Positions 13,901 to 27,627 of a DNA stretch of 64,000 bases are shown here, piece after piece. The translations under genes were made by a program, and so were the position numbers. Within the stretch, counting starts at the first letter, position 1. Every line of letters starts with the position of its first letter. The stretch is from NCBI RefSeq assembly GCF_039654945.1, contig NW_027361725.1:8742001-8806000 (forward strand), in the 5' to 3' direction. Source of the DNA: Dendrobates tinctorius. Its lineage: Eukaryota. The notes beneath the pieces were generated by a model that saw nothing but the letters and a program-made list of their open reading frames with translations, searched no databases and was not told where the DNA came from.

Positions 13901-16900
13901 CTGTGGAAAACCTTTTAGGCAGTGCAGCAAAGATGGGAGAGGTGATTGTGCTCGGCATGATAACACAACTAAAAGAGGTAAGCGGAAAACAAGTTCTTCA
14001 TTATCCCAGTCTTCTAAGGGAGCTTTGGAAGTGATAATTATTAAATGATGACTTATCACTAGGATTTGTCATCACTTTATGATCTAATCTCTGGAAACGG
14101 TCATTGATCCTATGAATGAGTGGATTTAGTGATGTTTTCCCTGCACAGCGGTCTTCTTGCCGCATCAGCTGTTTAGTTCTGTGCTGCCAGTTTAATTCAC
14201 TTGAACAGGACTCGTTTGCAGTTTCCACTTACAGCAGATGACCAGGTTGTCACTTTGCAGAAAATGTATTGCTTAATCAGCTCTGCTGATTCTTCCTTTT
14301 CATTATTGGGGTGAAGGAGGTCTTAACCCCTTTACGACATGCACCGTACTAGTACGGCACATGTCGTTTCTCCCCCTTTGATGTGGGCTCCGGCGCTGAG
14401 CCCACATCCTTTCCGGCACATGTCAGCTGTTTTGAACAGCTGACATGTGCCCAGAACAGCAGTGGGTGGAATTGCAATCCACCTGTGGCTGTTAACCCGT
14501 TAAATGCCGCTGTCAAACTCTTGTCAACGGCAGTTAACGAGCGCTTCTGGCAATTGCGCTGGAAATCCCGCCCGTAACTTGATTTTGGGTCACCGATGGG
14601 GTCTGCATGACAACCAGAAGTCTCCTGCAGACCTCTCTGGTTGTCACTTCTGGATTGCTATGAGCACGGCCTGGTGGTCGACGCTCATAGCAAGTGGGCA
14701 ATTCTAAAAATTAAAAAAAAAAGGTTCAAATCACCCCCTTTCGCCCCATTCAAAATAAAACAATAGAAAAAAAACATACATACACATATTTGTTATTACC
14801 GCATTTAGAATCACCCGATCTATCAATATAAAAAAAGAATTTGTTAGGCGCCGGATTCCTGCAGCTACACAACAGGAATCCAGAGCCTCACATGCTGCTC
14901 TGCAGCAAGTCATTCCTGAGGCTGTTCCTCTGCCGCTACACTGAGCATGCTCACGAGACGATCTCCCATTGGAGGTCGGGAGTCACGTGCTCAGGTCCTT
15001 CTCCAGATCTGATTGGTCCATCTCAGAGATCTGGAAGGTCCCGGCAGCGCACGGCTATAAAAGGGCCGCTCGGCCATGCGCTAGTATAGGCTCTTCTTGC
15101 TAGATGTGTGAATGGTGATGGATGTATGATTCTGGTGACTGACTTATTATGATTCCCCTCCCTCTGATATTACGCATGTGGATAGGGAACTATAGAAAGA
15201 GTCAGCGCCAGTCAATGGCAAGCCATAGGCCACTGTGCACACCGCACCTCTACACTAGCGTCCGGTGGTGTCACGTCTCTCACGGTGCTATCGCATAGCG
15301 GCTGTGTCTGCTGCCGCGCTGCATTCAGCAGCACTTACCGGCGTCCACAGTAGCGACGCCGCATGCACGGTAGGTCTAGACGGACACCGTCCCCTGTCTT
15401 GGACCCGTGTCCTGTGACCAGATACCGTGCGTGCAATTTCGCTGAGACCTGTGAGTCTAACAGGCTTGGTGTTTATGTTTATGTTACAGCGGCTCTGTGA
15501 GTTAACAGAGTCCGCTCTGTGCACATCGGGTGACGTTGAACCCGTGCGCATTATACCGCCATATAGCGTGTCTGCCATTAATTAGCAGCAGTGTTAACAG
15601 CTTCAGCACGGTGGACCCCGAACGGCGAACGCACTTTATTATTTATTTATTTAGTGTGTTCCGCCGTTCCTAACAGAATTACGGTAACCTGATTGTGTAA
15701 CGAGTAAACAAGTCAACACTAGAATTACATTTTTTTGGTCGCCACAACATTGTATTAATATGCAATAATGGGCGATCAAAAGATTGAATCTGCACCAAAA
15801 TGCTATAATTAAAAATGTTTGCTCGGCATGCAAAAAATAAGCCCTCACCCAACCTGAGATCACGAAAAATGGTGATTTTATGGTTCTCGGAAAATGGCGC
15901 AATTTTTTATTTTTTTTTAAACTTTGGATTTCTCCTACGCCTCATTGGGGGACACAGAGACAGTGGGGTGTTATGCTGCTGGCCACTAGGAGGACACTAA
16001 GTAAACCAGAAAAAAAGTTAGCTCCTCCCCTGCAGTATACACCCTCTCGCTGGCTGAGATTTCTCCAGTTCTTGCTTAGTGTCTATAGGAGGCACTTGGG
16101 TCTGGTTCTGACCCCACCGTTTTTATTTTATTTTTGGTTTTTCTGTAAATTTTTATTTTTTAATTAATGGAGTGAAGGGGGCGACGGTTCCTTTCTACAG
16201 CCCGCTCTCCCCCCGAACCAACAACAGGCAAGGTCGCAGAGTATACCTCCCCGTACACTTTCCTGCGACGATTGGGGCTGATTCCTCTGGCAATGATGGC
16301 GATGATCCTTACGGTCCCGGTAATCCACGGATACGAGGGCAAGCGCATGGAGTGAAATGGAGAAGACTGGAACAGCGCTTCCAAATGCCCTGAATCAGCC
16401 CCATAGCTCTCCATCCCCCTGCCATAGGGACGATCGATTGAGCATACTCCTTTAAGAACCCGCTCAGGAATCAGCCCAGGAGGATGAGAAGACCTGCATG
16501 GATGGCCCCGGACAGCGCGGCCTGCCGAGCACTGGAGTGGAGGTATGGGGTCGGGTCCTGGCCCCCGGGAGAAGCACTGACTTATAGTCAGCGGCGGTGC
16601 ACCGCACCCCCCCCCCGCGCTCTTGACGCTCAGGTAGTCCCCGGCTTTTCCGGCCTACTAGGCCGCAATTTGGATAGCGCCACCCGCGCTAACGTCGCCG
16701 CCCCCCTCCTCTTGGCACCTCTCATTCCTTACGAGACGCGCAATTCTAATCTCGGGGGCCATGTCTGTGAGGCGGGCACTCTGCCGGATACCGGGTGACA
16801 CCATGACACCACAGGGCCACCGCTATTCCTCCCGGAGGACACAGCACAGGACTGTGGGTAAGCTGCATCTGCCCTCAGATGTGCCCGGCACATTCCCTGC

Positions 16901-19900
16901 AGCTGCAGAAAGACTCTGCCGTTAACCCATTCAGGAGCGCTATGTCTCAATCTAAGGAGGCTAAACGGCCTGCTAAGAAGCACACTGCGTTTTTACCGTG
17001 TGTACCACTTGCAAGTCTGCCTTACCCAGTGCACAGACTAATCCGTTATGCACGGCCTGCGACCCGGCCTGCACTCAAACTCCCCTCACCTCCATTGCTG
17101 ACGGGCCTCCTGCGTTTAGTACCCCTGAGTGGGCTGCGTACCTGTCACGGTCGGTGTAGTCTCTTACCCAGTCTATATTCTCGCTCCGGGAGGACTCTTT
17201 AAGTCAGAAAGCGTCCTTACTTCCCGAGGAGGGCTCTGACGTCGGCCTGGAACCGTCCAACAGCAGGGGCCGTACTCCTTCAAGGGATGGTCAGGTCTCT
17301 AGAAAGCGGACCCATGATGCGTCCCCTAGTCACGTTCGCGCCTCAGCATTGGCGACTCCTGTCTCTCACTCTCCCTCTCCTGAGGTTCACAGTGAGCACG
17401 ACCCTGAATTCGAATCTGACACGTCAACCCCTCAGAATCCCCCAACTGATCAAGCATCGCTTGATTCTCTTATAGAATCAGTCAACAGGATTCTGGAGTT
17501 GGATGAGGAAAATATCCCTGCTCCAGCACACCCTATCTCATTTAAGAAAAACAAGCGTGTGCGCAGGTTATTTACTAGCAATCCGGACTTTAAGGAAATT
17601 GTCCAGAAACATAGGGATCGTCTGCATAAGCGGTTCACAGGGCAAAGTCTACTCAGGCTAAAATTTTGATCCAGACCTAATGAAGGATTGGTTATAGTCC
17701 CCTCCGGTGGACCCTCCTGTATCGCGTCTTGCTTCTAAAACGCTCCTATCCGTTTCTGAGGGTTCCTCAGTCAGAAACTCCTCCAGTCGTCAAATTGAAT
17801 ACCTTGCCCGTTCAGTTTTTGAAGCTTCAGGACCAGCGTTTTTTCCATCTTTTGCAACAATGAGGGTCACTAAAGGCCCTGTCACACTAAGCGATATCGC
17901 TAGCAATATCGCTGTAACGTCACCGGTTTTGTGACGTTATAGCGATATTGCTAGTGCTATCGCTATATCTGATACTTACCTCCGACCGGCTCCCCCGCTG
18001 ATTATCGCTGATCGCGCGAGAACGTCCTGGACCGTTTCTCGTCGTCAGCTTCCTGTTGGGCTTCCTGTGGCGCCGACGAGCGACGCGTGGACGCGGGCGG
18101 GAGGATGTCAGGATCGCCTCGTTTGACAGGTAAGTAGCAACCCCCGACCCCTGCTATGTCGCTGATGAGATCTGCCTGTGTGGCAGCTCACTAGCGACCA
18201 CTTAGCGATGCACCAGCGATCCTGACCGCGTCATATCGCTGGTCGTGATCGCTGGTGCATCGCTGAGTGTGACAGTACCTTTAGGCAATGGCCGCTTGGG
18301 CAGAAATCTTGATTACTTCCCTCCAAGGCACCAATCATCCTCCAGAAGCATCCACTGTCGCCAAGAAGATAATTCACGCAGCGGACTTTGTAGTGGACGC
18401 TTCTTTTGATGCCGCCAATTGCGCTGCTCAAACTGCCGCTAATGCGATCTCCATTAGAAGAAGCCCTATGGCTCCGCGACTGGCGGGCGGATGCCACATC
18501 TAAAAGATTGTTGACTTCGCTCCCCTTTCAAACGGGTCTGCTTTTTGGAGAGAAACTGGACCAGCTCATTTCTGATACTGGAAGTAAATTCCTTCCTCAA
18601 CAAAAGGCTGTTCGTCCGTTTCGCAACCAACAGCCGACGCGTTTTTGATCTTTTCGCAACAATTCCGGTTGGTCCTCCTCTACCTTCTCTTCCGGTCCAG
18701 CTTGGTCCCAGCGCGGAGACAGAGGCTCCCAGGTCTCATACAGACCTAACCGCTCTTGGAAACCCATACCTAGGGCTTCTGGATCTAGGGGAGCTAGATC
18801 TACCCAATGACTTGTTGCGTTATCCAGCGGACACCGACAAAGTAGGCGGTCGCCTACTTTCTGTGACGTCCGTCCGCGGATCTGGAATGCAGTAGGGACA
18901 GCACCCCGAGAAACCCAGAGACCCTTAACCCCTATACAGGGATCTGGAATTGTAGCAAGGCCCAGGGGGTGGCTGTCTGGTGGAGCAGTGCGCCAGAGCA
19001 GGACGGTCGCCAATAGGGAAGAAGGCGGGGAACCAAAAACGTAGTCAATAACCGGGAGAGCAGCGGAGGTACAGAAACGGCAGGCAGTAGGAGAGTCGAA
19101 TATCCAGGGCAAGGTACAAAAAACTGCAGGTAGTAGCAGAGTCGAATATCCAGGCCAAGGTCACAAACCGGGAGAATGGCAGAGGTACAAAATAGTCAGG
19201 CAGTAGAGGGGTCAGAAATCCAGACTGAGGTCAGTCAAACAATAGCGTAGCACATAGGGGAACCAAGAATATATCCGGCGGCTTGCATGACAAGTCCCAA
19301 GGTATTTGAGGGATCAGGTCATCCCTCACAGGCTCCCGGACTGATGATGTCATCAGGACCAGGCCAGATGGTGATGCACCAAACCCTTCATGATTGACAG
19401 AGGAGCGAAGCCTGCATCCATCAGATGTCTGCGCAGGAGCCCTTTCTCTGTCCCGCCATCACTCGGGGGCGAACCACGGCGCCTCCCAGTGGCCGAGGCA
19501 GGAACAGCAGGCCCCGAGTCTGACGGCGACGTGACAGTCCGGCGCCTCCTAGTGGCCGACGCCGGGACAGCAGGCCCCGAGTCTGACGGCGGCGTGACAG
19601 TCCGGCGCCTCCTAGTGGCCGAGGCAGGGAAAGCAGGCCCCGAGTCTGACCGCAACGTGACACTTTGCTTCAGCCACGCCTGGCTCGCGGTCGTCCACGG
19701 TTTTTCCTTTCCTCTCCCCCCCAAGAAAAAGACAAGCGTTATCCTTCGGGCTGTTCAGGCTCTGCAAACGGATGGAGTCATCATTCCGGTCCCTCATCAC
19801 GAAGGGTTCAGGGGATTTTATTCAAACCTTTTTGTGGTTCCAAAAATGGACGGGACGATGCGACCCATTCTGGATCTCAAACTGTTAAATCAGTTTGTCA

Positions 19901-22900
19901 AGGTACGGCGATTCCGAATGGAATCTCTCCGATCAGTTGTCGCTTCCATGGAAAAAGGAGAGTTCCTAGCATCCATCGACATCAAGGATGCTTACCTTCA
20001 CATTCCAATCTGCTCGTCCCTCCAGCAGTTCCTGCGTTTTGCAATTCACGAGGAACACTTCCAGTTCGTGGCCTTGCCCTTTGGACTCGCCACCATCCCC
20101 AGGGTCTTTACCAAGGTCATGGCGGCTGTATTGGTCATTCTCCACTCTCGGGGAGTAGTGGTGGTACCGTATCTGGACGACCTGCTCATCAAGTGTACGT
20201 CCATTCCAGTCTGCGAGGACTCCGTGGATCTAACTGTAAATACACTTTCTCACCTGGGGTGGAAGATAAACTTCGAAAAGTCTTTCCCAAAACCGGCTCA
20301 GCAGATTTCCTTTTTAGGAATGATCTTGGACACATCCCGCGGGTTGGTCATTCTCCAGAAAAGACCCAAGCCTTACAACAGGCAGCGCGGACTCTTTCCC
20401 GTCCAGTTTCTCACTCCATTCGTTTCAGCATGAGAGTTCTCGGAAAAATGGTGGCTGCGATGAAAGCAGTTCCATTTGAACACTTCCATCTCTGTCCCTT
20501 ACATCATGCGTTGCTGTTAGCTTGGGACAAGAACCCGTTCTCCCTGGACCGTCGGATCCTTCTGTCCCTGCGGGTCAGACAAGACCTCAGGTGGTGGACA
20601 TTGAGGTCCTCCCTGAATCAAGGGAGGTCTTTTCTCCCAGTAAGATGGTTGGTAGTAACCACCGACGCTAGTTTTCTCGGCTGTGGTGCGGTCTTTCGTC
20701 ACCACACGGCACAGGGTCGTTGGTCAACCTGAGAGTCACGTCTCCCCATCAACATTTTGGAGATACGAGCGATCAGATTAGCTCTACTGAGTTTCCACCA
20801 TCTCCTCGCAGGTCACCCCATCAGGATCCAATCTGACTACGCCACGGCTGTAGCGTATATCAACCGTCAGGGAGGTACCCGGAGCAGGATGGCTATGCAC
20901 AAAGTGAGTCACATCCTCCATTGGGCCGAGACCAACCATTTGCCCATCTCAGCAATCCACATCCCGGGCGTAGAAAATTGGGTGGCAGATTTTCTCAGTC
21001 GCCGAGGCATTGCCTCGGGAGAGTGGTCTTTTCATCCGCAAGTCTTTCAGAAGATTTGTCATTGTTGGGGGACTCCGGATGTGGATCTCATGGCCTCAAG
21101 ATTAAACAACAAGGTTCTTAGTTTCATTGCCCAATCCATGCGCCATCGGAGCGGACGCCCTAGTTCTGCCATGCCACCGGTTCTGGCTCCCGTATAACGT
21201 CCCTCCTCTTCCCTTACTTCCGAGGGTCATCAAGAAGATCAGAGCGGAGGGAGTACCAGTGATCCTAGTCGCGCCAGATTGGCCAAGCATGGTATGCAGA
21301 ACTAATACAACTAGTCGCCGACGTCCCCTGGCGACTTCCAGATCGCATGGATCTACTCTCACAGGGCCCGATTTACCACCAGAACTTTGGGGCCCTGTCT
21401 TTGACGGCGTGGCCGTCGAATACTGGTTTTTAGCACAGGCTGGGTTCTCGCACGACATGATTTCCACCATGATTAGTGCTAGGAAGCCTGTGTCCATGCG
21501 CATCTATCACTGCACCTGGAAAACCTTCTTTTCGTGGTGCAAGGATCATGGTCGATCCCCTCTGGTGTTTTCCATTCTGGCCATATTGGAATTCCTTCAA
21601 TCCGGATTAAAATCAGGCCTCGCGCTTAGCTCGTTCAAGGGCCAAATTTCAGCCTTGTCAGTGCTTTTCCAACACAAAATTGCCACCAAACTTTAGGTCA
21701 AGACATTCATTCAGGGTGTTTCCCATGTGGCGCCTCCTTATAGAAGGCCATTGGAATCATGGGACCTTAACCTGGTTCTCGGGGCCTTACAGGAGGCTCC
21801 TTTCGAACCGCGCAAGGACGTGTCACTAACCGTCCTCTCTTGGAAGGTGGTCTTTCTAGTGGCAATTACGTCAATCAGACGAGTTTCGGAATTGGCAGCC
21901 CTGTCCTGCCGTTCTCCGTTCCTGAATTTTCATCAGGACAAGGTAGTTCTCAGGACCTCTACGTCCTTCCTGCCCAAGGTCGTCTCCTCTTTCCATCTCA
22001 ATGAGGAAATTGTTTTGCCTTTCTTTTTGTCCGGTGCCAGTCCATCGCAATGAGAAGGCCCTCCACACCCTGGATGTGGTTAGGGCTCTGAGACTGTACA
22101 TCTCGCGGATGGCTCCCTTCCGCAAGTCAGATGCCCTGTTCATGCTTCCAGTGGGGCAGAGGATGTATCTAGTCGCTTCAAAAGCAACGCTAGCCAGGTG
22201 GATTCGCTTGGCGATTCAGGAATAATACCGTGTCAGGAACGCGCCTGTCCCAGCAGGGATTAGGGTGCACTCTACCTGCTCAGTGGGCGCCTCGTGGGCC
22301 ATTCGGCACCAGGCGTCGGCAGAACAGGTCTGCAAGGCGGCGACTTGGTCCAGTCTGCATACTTTTACAAGACATTACCAAATTCATTCTCAGGCCTCTG
22401 CGGATGCAGCTCTCGGCAGACGCAGGGCTGTGGAGTCAGTCGATACTCATTTTGGTGGAGTCGGTATAAAATGGACCGACTCCTAAAATATATAAAAAAA
22501 TTGGGTACAGTAGTTCAATGCAGAATTTGCTGAATATTTTTTCATAGGAATTCGGGAAATGTCCTATAAATGGCTGTTCTATTCCTGATCTAAGGCTACA
22601 TTCACACACAGCGTTTTTTCGAGGATACGTTTTTCAGTTGCAAAAGCAGATCAGTTTTTTAAAAAACCGCATCACCTGAAAGATTTTTGAGCTCATAGAT
22701 AATGTTTTCAATAGCAAAAGCAGTTTAGAAAAACGCCTCACAAACTGACACGCTCATTCTTTGTGAGGATCAGTTTTTGAGCCCAAAAACGGATGCTCAC
22801 AAAACGATGTGTCTGAATGTCATATCTTGAGACCCATTGACTTTGCTGGCATGCCCAGAGTCACTGCATTTTACTGCAAAAAACGGATCCTCAAAAACGC

Positions 22901-25900
22901 TGTGTGAATCATGGCCGTAGCCAGCAAGGGGCAGGGGGGGGGCAGCTGCCCCCCCTAGAAGCAGGGGCACGCACCTATAAAAACTCACTTGTATGCTGCA
23001 GTACTCCCTTCCTGCACCGGCTCCAGATTGCAGGGGGCAATCTCCCCTCCTCTGTCCTGGCTTCTGCTGTCTTCACCAGAGAGAGGAGGGGGAGGGGTGC
23101 CTGCCCTGCACAGGATCCGATTCCTGGGCCCCGAGCTGGAGAAAGTGAAAGTACTACTGCTCATCTCTGTCACAGGAAGGTAACTAATGCTTAATATTGT
23201 AGGTGATTATTGGGTGCTCTCTATAAAAGGAAGATCTTAAAAAGACTCTCAAAAGACTCTTCATGTTTCTTAAAATGGATGCTTGCACCCGTCAGTGAAA
23301 TATTTTGCCATCAATGTTCGATATGTTTGTGACAACAAAGAAATTGTTACCAAGACACTGGCAATAAAAGGTACTAAAGCTCATCACAGCAGCCAGTTTC
23401 TCCAGGCCTTAGTGGAAAAATTTCTGCAAGATTACGAACTCAAAAAAGAACAGGTTCTTGCTATTGTAACGGACAATGCTTCAAACATAAGTACAATTTA
23501 AACTGATGAATGAGAGTAATGAATAACAGCTAGAAGAAAATTTAGGATTCAGTATGTTTGAGATGGAAGGCCACAGTGCTGTTCATGTAACTGAGGAGCA
23601 AACAGATATTACAACAGAAGAACAGCAAAATTATACTGTAGAAATAGATGATCTTGTTTAAGCTGCTTCAAAACACTTTCATATTCATCACACGCTGCAG
23701 TTGGCAATAAGAGTCTGCAAGAGGGGACATGCTGGAAATCTGATTGGAAAAGTGAGGAAATTGGTTATTGCCGCCAGAACCCCTAAAATTGATTCCATCT
23801 TGAAGAGACGTGCTGGGAAAGGGGCAATTGTCGATCAAGCCACTCGGTGGGGCAGCACGTATTTAAAGATTGAGCGATTGCTTGAACTAAAACCGTTTCT
23901 TATAGATATGGCAAACCCTCAGGTAACCCTAAATGAAGGTCAATGGACACAGGTGGCTGAATTGAAGGAATTGCTTAATCACCCATTTACCGTGGCTAAA
24001 AAATTACAAGCTGAGGATTTAACTCCTGGCATTTTCATAAGGGAGTGGAAGAACTTCCTATTTTGCCTGTCCCAATGAGGAGGTTTAATCGCAGATGGCA
24101 ATTCTGCTTCAATGAAACGGAGAGAGACACAGCTATTGGAAAATAAAAATTTTCTGGCAGCTGTTTATGTGGACCCAAGTTATCGTATACTGCTTGATGA
24201 TCAACAGCTTACTAAAGGAAAAGAAGCTCTGACTGAGGTAGCAGTTAGGATGAGTGGCCTACAGGAGGACTGCCAGGTGCAAGAGGACTTGGGTCCTGAC
24301 AGTGCTACTGCTGCCATATCTTCATCCTCAACAGATGAGGAGTTTGAACTATGACAAGTATTTGGATGACGTGGAGCAGGAAAAGCGTTGCCGCAAGGAA
24401 AAAAGATTTCACTCCGTCTCCAATAGCAAGCAGATTGACCATATTTCAGCAAAATGTTTTACTTGCTCTCAAAGAAATAGAAAAATTCAACCGTTCATCA
24501 AAACTGACTGTGCATGAGGCAATTCCTTTATACTCGGAAATTGTTGATGTTGCCCATGTGGTTACAGCTTTGCCTCCAACCCAAGTTAGTGTAGGGAGAC
24601 TGTTCTCTGGCCTTAACCTCAAATCTGACCTAATAGTTTTATCTATGAAGGAGGATCCGATGGAGGCAATTCTATTTCTTAGAACAAATTCATAGACTGC
24701 ACAAATGTTATTTAGTATGTTTTTGTTGAAAACTGTTTTTTGCCAGTTACATAGTTTATTACATAGTGAAAATATATATATATGTAATCGATATTACATA
24801 GTGTATTACATATTTACAATTTATTCGTTTTTTGTGTTCTAAAGTTGTATTCCAATAAATATATATTATGTTCTATCTAAATATCTTGATTATTGTATCA
24901 TAAAAGTAATTAAATGTCTGATGTTCACATTGTGCTACGATAAATTTTTCACTTAAATATAAGCAATATATGTCGGTGTAAGGGAAATTGAGAAGTCAGA
25001 GTCGCAGGTTTGGCTTACCGACTCCACATCCCTGGGCAGACGCAGCCTACAATCGGCAGTACCTCAGTGTTGACTCAGTGGTATATGGGGTATTAGCAGA
25101 TGTATGCTTCTCACCCAGGGACTGCTTTAGCACATCCCACTGTCTGTGTCCCCCAATGAGGCATAGGAGAAAATAGGGATTTTTGTGTACTCACCATAAA
25201 ATCCTGTTCTCCGAGCCAATCATTGGGGGAGACAGAGACAGTGGGGTGTTATGCTGCTGGCCACTAGGATGACACGAAGTAAACCAGAAAAAAAGTTAGC
25301 TCCTCCCCTGCAGTATACAGTCATGGCCAAAAGTTCTGAGAATGACACAAATATTATATTTTCACAAGATCTGCTGCTCTCTGGTTTTTATGTGTGTTTG
25401 TCAGATGTTTTTATCACATGCAGAAATATAATTGCAATCATATTATGTGCAATCATATTATGAGTAGCAAAAGGTTATATTGACAGTTAGAATGAGTTAA
25501 TGCAGCAAGTCAATATTTGCAGTGTTGACCCTTCTTCTTCAGGACCTCAGCAATTCTCCCTGGCATGCTCTCAATCAACTTCTGGATCAAATCCTGACTG
25601 ATAGCAGTCCATTCTTGCAAAATCAATGCTTTTATTTTGTCTGAATTTGAAGGTTTTTGTTTGTCCACCCGTCTCTTGATGATTGACCACAAGTTCTCAA
25701 TGGGATTAAGATCTGGGGAGTTTCCAGGCCATGGTCCCAAAATCTCTGTTTTGTTCCCTGAGCCATTTAGTTATCACCTTTGCTTTATGGCAAGGTGCTC
25801 CATCATGTTGAAAAAGGCATTGTTGATCGCCAAACTGCTCTTGGACGGTTGGGAGAAGTTGCTCTTGGAGGACATTCTGGTACCATTCTTTATTCATGGC

Positions 25901-27627
25901 TGTGTTTTTAGGCAAGACTGAGAGAGAGCCCATTCCCTTGGCTGAGAAGCAACCCCACACATGAATGGTTTCAGGATGCTTGACAGTTGGCATGAGACAA
26001 GACTGGTGGTAGCGCTCACCGGGTCTTCTCCAAATAAGCCGTTTTCCAGATGTCCCAAACAATTGAAAAGGGGATTCATCAGAGAAAATGACTTTACCCC
26101 AGTCCTCAGCAGTCCACTCCCTGTACCTCTTGCAGAATATCCGTCTGTCCATGATGTTTTTTCTGGAGAGAAGTGGCTTCTTTGCTGCCCTCCTTGAGAC
26201 CAGGCCTTGCTCCAAGAGTCTCCGCCTCACAGTGCGTGCAGATGCACTCACACCTGCCTGCTGCCATTCCTGAGCAAGCTCTGCACTGCTGGTAGTCCGA
26301 TCCCGCAGCTGAAACACTTTTAAGAGACGGTCCTGGCGCTTGCTGGTCTTTCATGGGCGCCCTGGAGCCTTTTTGGCAACAAGGGAACCTCTCTCCTTGA
26401 AGTTCTTGATGATGCGATAGATTGTTGACTGAGGTGCAATCTTTCTAGCTGCGATACTCTTCCCTGTTAGGCCATTTTTGTGCAGTGCAATGATGACTGC
26501 ATGTGTTTCTTTAGAGATAACCATGGTTAACAGAAGAGAAACAATGATGCCAAGCACCAGCCTCCTTTTAAAGTGTCCAGTGGTGTCATTCTTACTTAAT
26601 CATGACAGATTGATCTCCAGCCCTGTCCTCCTCAACACCCACACCTGTGTTAATGGAGCAATCACTGAAACGATGTTAGCTGGTCCTTTTAAGGCAATGA
26701 TGTTGAAATGTGTTTTGGGGGATAAAGTTCATTTTCTAGGCAAATATTGACTTTGCAAGTAATTGCTGTTAAGCTGATCACTCTTTATAACATTCTGGAG
26801 TGTATGCAAATTGCCATTAGAAAAAATGAAGCAGTAGACTTTGTAAAAATTAATATGTGTCATTCTCAAAACTTTTGGCCATGACTGTACACCCTCTCGC
26901 TGGCTGAGATTTCTACAGTTCGGTGAAAAAAGCAGTAGGAGCATAAACAGTCAACAATAACCATAATTATGTCAAAACCTAAGAATGCTACAGTGAGCCA
27001 ATAGGCTAAACAGGGTGGGTGCTGTGTCCCCCAATTATTGGCTTGGAGAAAAGAATTTTACGGTGAGTACACAAAAATCCCTATTTTTTTTTCACCACTC
27101 AAATAACAAAAAAAAAAGACATATTTGGTGTCAATGAACTCGTAATGACCTGGAGAATCCTAGTGGCAGGTGAGTTTTAGCATTTGATGAACATGGTAAA
27201 AAAAAAACAATTGTGGAATCGCACTTTTTTTGCAATTTCACCGCACTTGGAATTTTTTTCCCCGTTTTTGAGTACACTGTATGGTAAAACCAACTTGTCC
27301 TACAAAAAACAAGCCCTCACATGGCCATGTTGGCCGAAAAATAAAAAAGTTATGGCTCTGGGAAGAAGGGAAGCGAAAAGCGGGAACGCAAAAACAAAAA
27401 AGGGGTACGTCATAAAGTAATGGTGTATCCTAATAATATTAGATGGAAGATCCCTATAAATTGTCTGGACTTCATTATGCTTCTTATTTTATTTGTTATT
27501 GTATTGATGAGTATTTATTCTAAGTATTAGCAACCTTTATATTCTATTGATAGGGCAAATATTTCCTGGAGGATCCCACTGGAACAGTTCAGCTTGATCT
27601 CGGCAAAGCAATATCCTTTCTTCATCC

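What the first reader, a model, noticed from the sequence alone, without database searches (positions are those of the whole stretch)
25136..27086. DIRS right terminal segment is flipped between its own inverted repeats (possible flip-flop isomer)
Seen in the sequence: 25136-25172 is complementary to the element's 5' end (15929-15967), and 25171-25235 is complementary to the 3' end (27022-27086). This is a normal DIRS internal complementary region (ICR). However, the terminal-repeat copy after it (25220-26921, ignoring the Tc1) is a DIRECT repeat of the left terminal repeat (15942-16071) and is followed by the unique spacer. Established: DIRS1-type elements have ICR, spacer, then an INVERTED right terminal repeat. 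Inverting 25236-27021 between the two inverted repeats of about 65 bp restores the canonical layout. Inference: the segment is invertible, through template switching on the panhandle during reverse transcription or through the element's own tyrosine recombinase. That would give two isomers and could re-orient the terminal promoter from antisense to sense. I do not know whether this has been described.
Basis: partly seen in the sequence, partly recalled or inferred. Interest (0 to 1): 0.8.

Follow-up and report, generated by a model that had tools for sequence, protein, structure and literature searches.

The report
One-off flipped end in frog DIRS
An old, dead copy of a frog DIRS jumping gene has the short segment next to its right end turned around between two 66-base inverted repeats, but all 17 related copies examined have the normal layout, so this looks like a single accident, not a working flip-flop switch.

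Summary
The DIRS1-like element at 15929-27087 has a normal internal complementary region (lICR 25128-25172, rICR 25170-25235, overlapping on AAA). The copy of the terminal repeat that follows it is direct rather than inverted, and it is split by a Tc1.

Turning 25236-27021 around gives a sequence that aligns without breaks to canonical relatives. Against its closest relatives (Dendrobates tinctorius copies, about 90% identical), the window is colinear everywhere except this segment.

The direct layout is not the family norm. All 17 right ends read in 12 loci from three dendrobatoid frogs are canonical, and none is flipped. That rules out a 50:50 flip-flop and puts the flipped share below roughly 16%.

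The copy is old and inactive. It has frameshifts and four foreign insertions, and its arms are only 91% alike. It sits as a clean single integration in a T-run of another repeat.

The best reading is one unprogrammed inversion across the rICR/rTer arms. Whether it happened at birth or after integration cannot be decided here. A recombinase-made inversion in the circular intermediate would leave the same product.

No reads from the source animal were available, so assembly and heterozygosity are unchecked. Interest is low to moderate. The copy is a rare example of a hybrid between the ITR/ICR and direct-repeat layouts.

The parts
15929..16071 (+). Left terminus. The outer ~13 nt plus the start of the repeat are mirrored in the lICR. 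The 130-nt terminal repeat L is 15942-16071.
   Evidence: 93% identical to the left terminus of L001 and 91% to that of L004.
17874..18282 (.). ~410-bp insertion absent from L001 and L004, bounded by 26-nt inverted repeats (MITE-like)
   Evidence: pair I7; alignment gap
19390..20433 (+). Reverse transcriptase ORF remnant, preceded by three 63-nt tandem repeats (19477-19665)
   Evidence: Pfam RVT_1 E=3.7e-19. Homologues are dendrobatid frog DIRS pol fragments. tblastn.
20430..21412 (+). RNase H and methyltransferase-region remnants, frameshifted
   Evidence: tblastn of frog DIRS pol proteins in several frames. The intact relative L010 has RT_RNaseH and a weak Dam match.
21382..22420 (+). Tyrosine recombinase remnant in at least two frames. 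The HxxR motif reads HSTC, and the ...HTFTRHY motif is kept.
   Evidence: tblastn of the L010 ORF3 C-terminus, 63-66% identity. Motifs read.
22425..25031 (.). ~2.6-kb foreign insertion absent from L001 and L004; identity unresolved (only a weak DUF659 match)
25128..25172 (+). lICR, complementary to the left terminus
   Evidence: pair I2
25170..25235 (+). rICR, the left arm of the inversion. It overlaps the lICR on the AAA circular-junction triplet (25170-25172).
   Evidence: (pair I1)
25236..27021 (.). The inverted segment. It is 1786 bp now and was 214 bp before the Tc1 insertion. It aligns to the minus strand of canonical relatives.
25220..25317 (+). Direct copy of the terminal repeat L, first part
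   Evidence: family D2, 97%
25318..26887 (-). Tc1/mariner insertion with 40-nt terminal inverted repeats and a TA duplication
   Evidence: (pair I3). A very high-copy family in other frog runs.
26890..26921 (+). Direct copy of the terminal repeat L, last part
   Evidence: family D6, 97%
26922..27021 (+). Subfamily-specific spacer. It is 97% identical to the minus strand of L001 13841-13938 and L004 14035-14133.
27022..27087 (+). Right terminus (last 16 nt of the inverted L plus the right extension), the right arm of the inversion
   Evidence: The end of the element is fixed by the empty-site comparison.

Best explanation
This is a canonical DIRS1-like tyrosine-recombinase retrotransposon that suffered one unprogrammed inversion. 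The inverted piece was the ~214-bp stretch (spacer plus right inverted terminal repeat) between the rICR and the complementary right terminus. Those two 66-nt sequences form an inverted repeat in every member of the family.

Shown here:
- The inversion itself and its limits inside the arms.
- The canonical state of all relatives read.
- A clean single integration.
- The age and decay of the copy.

Inferred: the arms paired, as a hairpin in single-stranded DNA or a cruciform in duplex DNA, and the loop was re-joined in reverse.

The timing is unresolved. I lean towards the extrachromosomal intermediate or shortly after integration, when the arms were still nearly identical (about 45% of total probability). 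That could occur by two homology-guided reverse-transcriptase template switches, or by the element's recombinase acting between the circle junction and the ICR. A later chromosomal event, by replication template switching or recombination, takes about 35%.

The flipped copy has direct instead of inverted terminal repeats. Under the Cappello model the left repeat is rebuilt from the inverted right repeat, so this copy was probably unable to replicate and is a dead end.
For: - Repeats confirmed.
- Window versus L004 and L001 (same subfamily, ~90% identity): all blocks are colinear on the plus strand, except 25170-25319 and 26888-27086, which match the minus strand.
- The un-flipped window sequence aligns without breaks to five canonical right ends.
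- 17 of 17 right ends in 12 loci (353 kb) of D. tinctorius, Ranitomeya imitator and Anomaloglossus baeobatrachus are canonical. tblastn found no further DIRS bodies in those loci.
- Empty sites in paralogous copies of the flanking repeat show one integration into a T-run, with no target duplication and proper ends.
- Age: repeat-to-repeat identity of 95.5% and arm identity of 90.9% resemble the old copies L001 and L004. The ORFs are frameshifted.
- The right module of L004 folds as single-stranded DNA into the arm stem with the ~212-nt loop (-69 kcal/mol, z = -7.7).
- The canonical layout, the TTT/TTT/AAA junction and the ICR sizes match Xenopus DIRS1-like elements (PMC3266345).
- The ICR is essential, and the left repeat is restored from the right one (PMC7192593).
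Against: - The 17 comparison copies come from other genome assemblies (D. tinctorius, R. imitator, A. baeobatrachus; whether the window comes from one of them is unknown), and none is known to be from the window's own assembly.
- The sample is small, so a flipped share of up to ~16% is not excluded.
- No reads of the source animal were served. The best run held 47% of the sampled words, most likely the Tc1 (58% of the stretch). Assembly correctness and heterozygosity at this locus are therefore unchecked.
- The crossover point and the timing cannot be read from the sequence. The only candidate diagnostic site in the arms is a CpG that decays in parallel.
Confidence: 0.8

Rival explanations
1. 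Programmed or frequent flip-flop. The segment is invertible in living elements, by the tyrosine recombinase or by reverse-transcription template switching, and gives two isomers with different promoter orientation.
For: - In duplex DNA the ICR has the same sequence as the circle junction, in inverted orientation. Recombinase crossover between the two in a circular intermediate would therefore give exactly the observed product (inference from the anatomy).
- The arms are conserved in every relative.
Against: - 0 of 17 relatives are flipped. An equilibrium flip-flop would predict about half.
- The only flipped copy is old and dead.
- Arm conservation is already explained by the ICR's essential role in replication (PMC7192593).
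- Earlier scan notes on this genome record no second flipped copy, though this is weak evidence.
Confidence: 0.07
2. The direct arrangement is simply this family's normal structure.
For: None beyond this one copy.
Against: The same-subfamily copies L001 and L004, and 15 other relatives, carry the inverted right repeat.
Confidence: 0.01
3. Assembly artefact: the segment was mis-oriented between the two arms.
For: Inverted repeats can confuse assemblers. No locus-specific reads could be laid.
Against: - The arms are only 66 nt long and differ at 6 positions.
- The inverted piece is 1.8 kb and carries a Tc1 with intact junctions.
- Reads longer than about 2 kb would span it.
- Both seams are clean.
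Confidence: 0.04
4. Composite of two copies. A second element integrated in reverse into the resident ICR, and most of it was then deleted exactly at its own junction-like site.
For: Recombinase integration of a circle into a resident ICR would place b'-L-spacer-b directly after the lICR (inference). DIRS-1 is reported to insert into other DIRS-1 copies (PMC7192593).
Against: - It needs a second, exact deletion.
- The sequence after 27087 continues the same target repeat as the left flank, as the empty-site copies show. The right end is therefore the original integration boundary.
Confidence: 0.04

Closest known systems
DIRS1-like retrotransposons of vertebrates (e.g. Xenopus tropicalis XtDIRS and Anolis AcDIRS, as annotated by Piednoel et al. 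2011, PMC3266345)
   Same: - RT/RNase H/methyltransferase-region and tyrosine recombinase remnants.
- A left terminal repeat of ~130 nt.
- A two-part ICR of about 40 + 66 nt overlapping on AAA.
- Termini TTT...TTT, a right extension, and no target duplication.
   Different: The right terminal repeat and its spacer lie in direct instead of inverted orientation, so the element has no inverted terminal repeats as it stands.
PAT and Ngaro elements with split direct repeats (A1 ... B1 A2 ... B2)
   Same: The left-end repeat recurs in direct orientation near the right end, immediately after a copy of the right-end sequence.
   Different: - The internal copy of the right end (rICR) is inverted, not direct, and an lICR is present.
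- By sequence the element belongs to a DIRS1-like family.
- It is a hybrid of the kind that Szitenberg et al. 2014 (PMC4157794) say must have existed but is 'not observed'.
Inversion systems between inverted recombinase sites (Flp/FRT isomers of the yeast 2-micron plasmid; from my own knowledge)
   Same: A segment bounded by inverted repeats lies in an element that encodes a tyrosine recombinase. The ICR is an inverted copy of the recombinase's presumed site.
   Different: There is no evidence of two co-existing isomers, of recurrence, or of recombinase action at the ICR.
Small inversions made by inverted repeats or by replication errors (e.g. L1 5' inversions by twin priming; template switching at quasi-palindromes; from my own knowledge)
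   Same: A one-off inversion bounded by short homologous inverted sequences in a single copy of a repeat.
   Different: Here the arms are functional parts of the element (ICR and terminus). Every copy of the family therefore carries the substrate.

Membership tests
DIRS1-like retrotransposons (order DIRS) | Reverse transcriptase/RNase H of the DIRS type | tested here: met
   RVT_1 E=3.7e-19. Best homologues are frog DIRS pol fragments. tblastn at 52-64% identity over RT-RNase H.
DIRS1-like retrotransposons (order DIRS) | Methyltransferase-like domain after RNase H | tested here: inconclusive
   The window region 21133-21412 aligns to the C-terminal part of frog pol proteins. The intact relative L010 gives only a sub-threshold Dam match (E=2e-4, 21.5 bits against a cut-off of 28.1).
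DIRS1-like retrotransposons (order DIRS) | Tyrosine recombinase | tested here: inconclusive
   Pfam and PDB sequence searches of the intact L010 C-terminus found nothing. The R...HxxR...W...Y-type motifs are readable in L010 ([31 protein letters not shown]). They are also readable in the window remnant ([31 protein letters not shown]), and the two align at 63-66%. No fold was predicted.
DIRS1-like retrotransposons (order DIRS) | Internal complementary region matching both termini, with the two halves overlapping on a 3-bp junction | tested here: met
   (pairs I1 and I2); overlap AAA at 25170-25172
DIRS1-like retrotransposons (order DIRS) | Inverted terminal repeats | tested here: not met
   The ~130-nt repeat is direct in this copy (families D2 and D6). 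Only ~16 nt of inverted repeat remain at the right end. The feature is met once 25236-27021 is inverted, and it is met in all 17 relatives. The copy is therefore a rearranged member by descent, not a member by present structure.
DIRS1-like retrotransposons (order DIRS) | Integration without target-site duplication, at a trinucleotide matching the junction | tested here: met
   Empty-site comparison...TTTGGA | element | TTTTTCACCAC..., inside a T-run
PAT/Ngaro-type split direct repeats | A1 ... B1 A2 ... B2 with B1 and B2 direct | tested here: not met
   A1 and A2 are direct, but B1 (rICR) is inverted relative to B2
Site-specific invertible segment (flip-flop) | Both orientations occur among copies or molecules | tested here: not met
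   0 of 17 relatives are flipped. No second orientation of this locus could be looked for, because no source reads were served.

The most novel reading that the evidence does not exclude
DIRS elements occasionally flip their rICR-to-terminus module in the extrachromosomal intermediate. The cause would be their own tyrosine recombinase acting between the circle junction and the ICR (an inverted copy of the same site), or homology-guided template switching. This would yield 'born-flipped' insertions with direct terminal repeats. It would be a low-rate side reaction of DIRS replication, and a one-step natural route from the ITR/ICR architecture towards the split-direct-repeat architecture of PAT and Ngaro elements.
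Probability: 0.15. Interest if true: 0.6.

Novelty: new member of a known kind. Interest (0 to 1): 0.28.

Why it matters
As found, it matters little: one rearranged fossil copy. Two points give it some value.

First, every DIRS1-like copy carries a 66-nt inverted repeat around its right terminal repeat. This copy shows that the repeat can mediate a clean inversion that turns inverted terminal repeats into direct ones in a single step. Szitenberg et al. 2014 (PMC4157794) inferred that such ITR-to-direct-repeat transitions need intermediate forms that 'are not observed'. This is one, though probably inviable.

Second, the anatomy predicts that the element's recombinase could make the same product from the circular intermediate. 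That is testable in the Dictyostelium DIRS-1 retrotransposition assay and would bear on whether a double-stranded circle really is the integration substrate.

Tried and rejected
1. Reads. The one run search returned only runs holding at most 47% of the words, apparently the Tc1. The one read-laying run was swamped by Tc1 contigs. It listed no strand-change joints at the arms and gave no locus-specific pieces. There is therefore no read-level test of the assembly or of family-wide orientation. I should have laid a stretch without the Tc1.

2. Metagenome scan for the inner end of the rICR: 0 matches.

3. Protein search with the recombinase ORF piece 21127-21696: no hits.

4. Crossover mapping. 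The only position where the rICR and rTer arms seemed to differ consistently (CGAG versus CAAG) is a CpG that has decayed differently in L001, L004 and the window. I rejected it as a marker.

5. Timing from divergence. The arms (6 of 66 positions differ) are somewhat more diverged than the long repeats (4 of ~130). The old canonical copies L001 and L004 show the same pattern, so this is not informative.

6. Pfam and PDB sequence searches for the tyrosine recombinase of an intact relative: nothing. Only motifs were read.

7. Literature. No description of a flipped ICR-to-terminus module was found in the searchable library. Key reviews (Poulter and Goodwin 2005; Poulter and Butler 2015) were not retrieved or read.

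8. I first called the 22425-25031 insert hAT-like. Pfam does not support this.
Full report
**Observation.**
- The element runs from 15929 to 27087.
- Its left end (15929-15973) is complementary to 25128-25172. Ungapped identity is 82%, but with a 2-nt indel the first ~30 nt differ only at one CpG.
- Its right end (27022-27087) is complementary to 25170-25235 (66 nt, 91%).
- The two halves of this internal complementary region (ICR) overlap on AAA, and the element begins and ends with TTT.
- The 130-nt terminal repeat (15942-16071) recurs in direct orientation at 25220-25317 and 26890-26921 (97%).
- That direct copy is split by a Tc1 (25318-26887) with a TA duplication and an HTH_Tnp_Tc3_2 match at E=5e-17.
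- Shuffled controls expect no such matches.

**What the element is.**
- An RT ORF remnant (RVT_1, E=3.7e-19) has its best homologues in DIRS pol fragments annotated in Ranitomeya imitator and Dendrobates tinctorius.
- RNase H, methyltransferase-region and tyrosine-recombinase remnants follow in shifted frames. The recombinase keeps IRRVSEL and ...HTFTRHY, but its HxxR motif reads HSTC.
- Compared with its closest relatives, the copy carries four foreign insertions or expansions: 17874-18282, about 18861-19742, 22425-25031 and the Tc1.
- It is an old, inactive copy.
- The junction triplets, ICR sizes and repeat lengths match those tabulated for Xenopus and Anolis DIRS1-like elements (PMC3266345).

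**Is the direct layout the family's structure? No.**
- I fetched 12 loci (353 kb) around homologous RT fragments and mapped window-derived probes onto them. One distant young copy was checked with a self-repeat search.
- All 17 right ends have the canonical order: ICR on the plus strand, then spacer and terminal repeat on the minus strand, then the right extension.
- The breakdown is five from D. tinctorius, eleven from R. imitator and one from Anomaloglossus baeobatrachus.
- tblastn found no further DIRS bodies in these loci.
- Two D. tinctorius copies, L001 and L004, belong to the window copy's own subfamily (~90% identity). They share its otherwise unique spacer at 97%, on the opposite strand.
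- L001 and L004 share a right flank and may be one event, which leaves 16 independent right ends.
- With 0 of 17 flipped, the 95% upper bound on the flipped share is about 16%, and a 50:50 equilibrium is excluded.

**The inversion itself.**
- Window versus L004 or L001 is colinear on the plus strand up to 25228. It then matches the minus strand for 25170-25319 and 26888-27086, and the plus strand again for 27022-27089.
- A sequence built by reversing 25236-27021, with the Tc1 removed, aligns without breaks to five canonical right modules.
- The inverted piece was 214 bp before the Tc1 arrived. L004 has 212 bp between its arms.
- Both breakpoints lie somewhere inside the 66-nt arms.

**One clean integration.**
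- Both flanks belong to another repeat family.
- Uninterrupted paralogues in R. imitator show the two flanks adjacent. The integration is inside a T-run (...TTTGGA | TTTTTCACCAC...) with no duplication, as expected for DIRS.
- The right end is therefore the original boundary. This argues against a composite of two nested copies.

**Mechanism.** In single-stranded DNA the right module folds into the arm stem with the ~212-nt loop. Three routes give the same product.
- (a) Chromosomal replication template switching or recombination between the arms.
- (b) Two homology-guided reverse-transcriptase switches, via a second cDNA molecule.
- (c) Recombinase crossover in a double-stranded circle, between the junction (right end joined to left end) and the ICR. 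In duplex DNA the ICR is the same sequence inverted, and on paper this inverts exactly arm-loop-arm.

I could not separate these routes. The one apparent diagnostic site in the arms is a CpG with parallel decay. Divergence patterns match those of old canonical copies.

All six arm mismatches look like private changes (three on each arm), so the arms show no recent homogenisation. At 91% identity, with a longest perfect run of 26 nt, they are now poor recombination substrates. That mildly favours an early event, at or near birth.

In the Cappello model the left repeat is rebuilt by copying the inverted right repeat, and the ICR is essential (PMC7192593). The flipped copy would therefore probably not replicate, which fits its being a singleton.

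**Not tested.**
- No run held this locus. The best share of words was 0.47, most likely the Tc1.
- The single read-laying run was dominated by Tc1 contigs and gave no orientation data.
- Assembly correctness, heterozygosity and family-wide frequency in the source genome therefore remain open.
- A metagenome scan found nothing.

**Comparison with known systems.**
- By descent this is a DIRS1-like element. By present structure it fails the 'inverted terminal repeats' criterion. It resembles a hybrid between the ITR/ICR and split-direct-repeat layouts.
- Szitenberg et al. 2014 (PMC4157794) argued that such transitions need sequential inversions whose intermediates 'are not observed, possibly due to their inviability'. 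This copy is such a form, and it is dead.
- I found no description of a flipped ICR-to-terminus module in the searchable literature. That search is incomplete.

**Verdict.** The structural interpretation is right, and the flip-flop interpretation is not supported. This is a one-off inversion in a fossil DIRS copy, of low to moderate interest, with a testable side hypothesis about recombinase action on the ICR.

Noticed in passing
L002:30381-30486: A 107-bp 'termini-only' DIRS derivative in R. imitator. The first ~46 nt of the left terminus are joined directly to the last ~60 nt of the right terminus, with no body and no ICR. It could be a deletion across the paired terminal repeats or a mini-element.
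   Followed up: partly
L009:24028-26176: The left terminal repeat plus ~180 nt of leader occurs twice in the same orientation, 1835 bp apart, ahead of one DIRS body. This is either a tandem duplication of the 5' module or a nested fragment.
   Followed up: no
L011:9548-11851: A deleted DIRS copy in which the first third of the recombinase region is joined directly to the last ~48 nt of the right terminus. It lies immediately after another copy's right end.
   Followed up: no
L001:12992-13840: About 850 bp of extra sequence lies between the rICR and the spacer of a canonical D. tinctorius copy. It is absent from its near-twin L004. L001 and L004 also share their right flank, so they may be a segmental duplication.
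   Followed up: no
window 15629-15928 and 27088-27387: The DIRS copy sits inside another interspersed repeat that is also present, uninterrupted, several times in R. imitator loci (L003, L007, L008). Contigs from other frog runs cover the right flank at high depth.
   Followed up: partly
window 19044-19231 and 19477-19665: Tandem repeats (units of ~46-116 nt and 3 x 63 nt) lie just upstream of and inside the N-terminal part of the RT ORF. This region is about 880 bp here versus about 120 bp in L004.
   Followed up: no
window 27058-27070 and 25187-25199 (complement): The conserved ACGGTGAGTAC, a splice-donor-like word noted by an earlier finding, lies inside both arms of the inversion.
   Followed up: no
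window 22425-25031: A 2.6-kb insert in the DIRS body carries several 70-125-aa ORFs and only a weak DUF659 match. Its identity is unresolved.
   Followed up: partly
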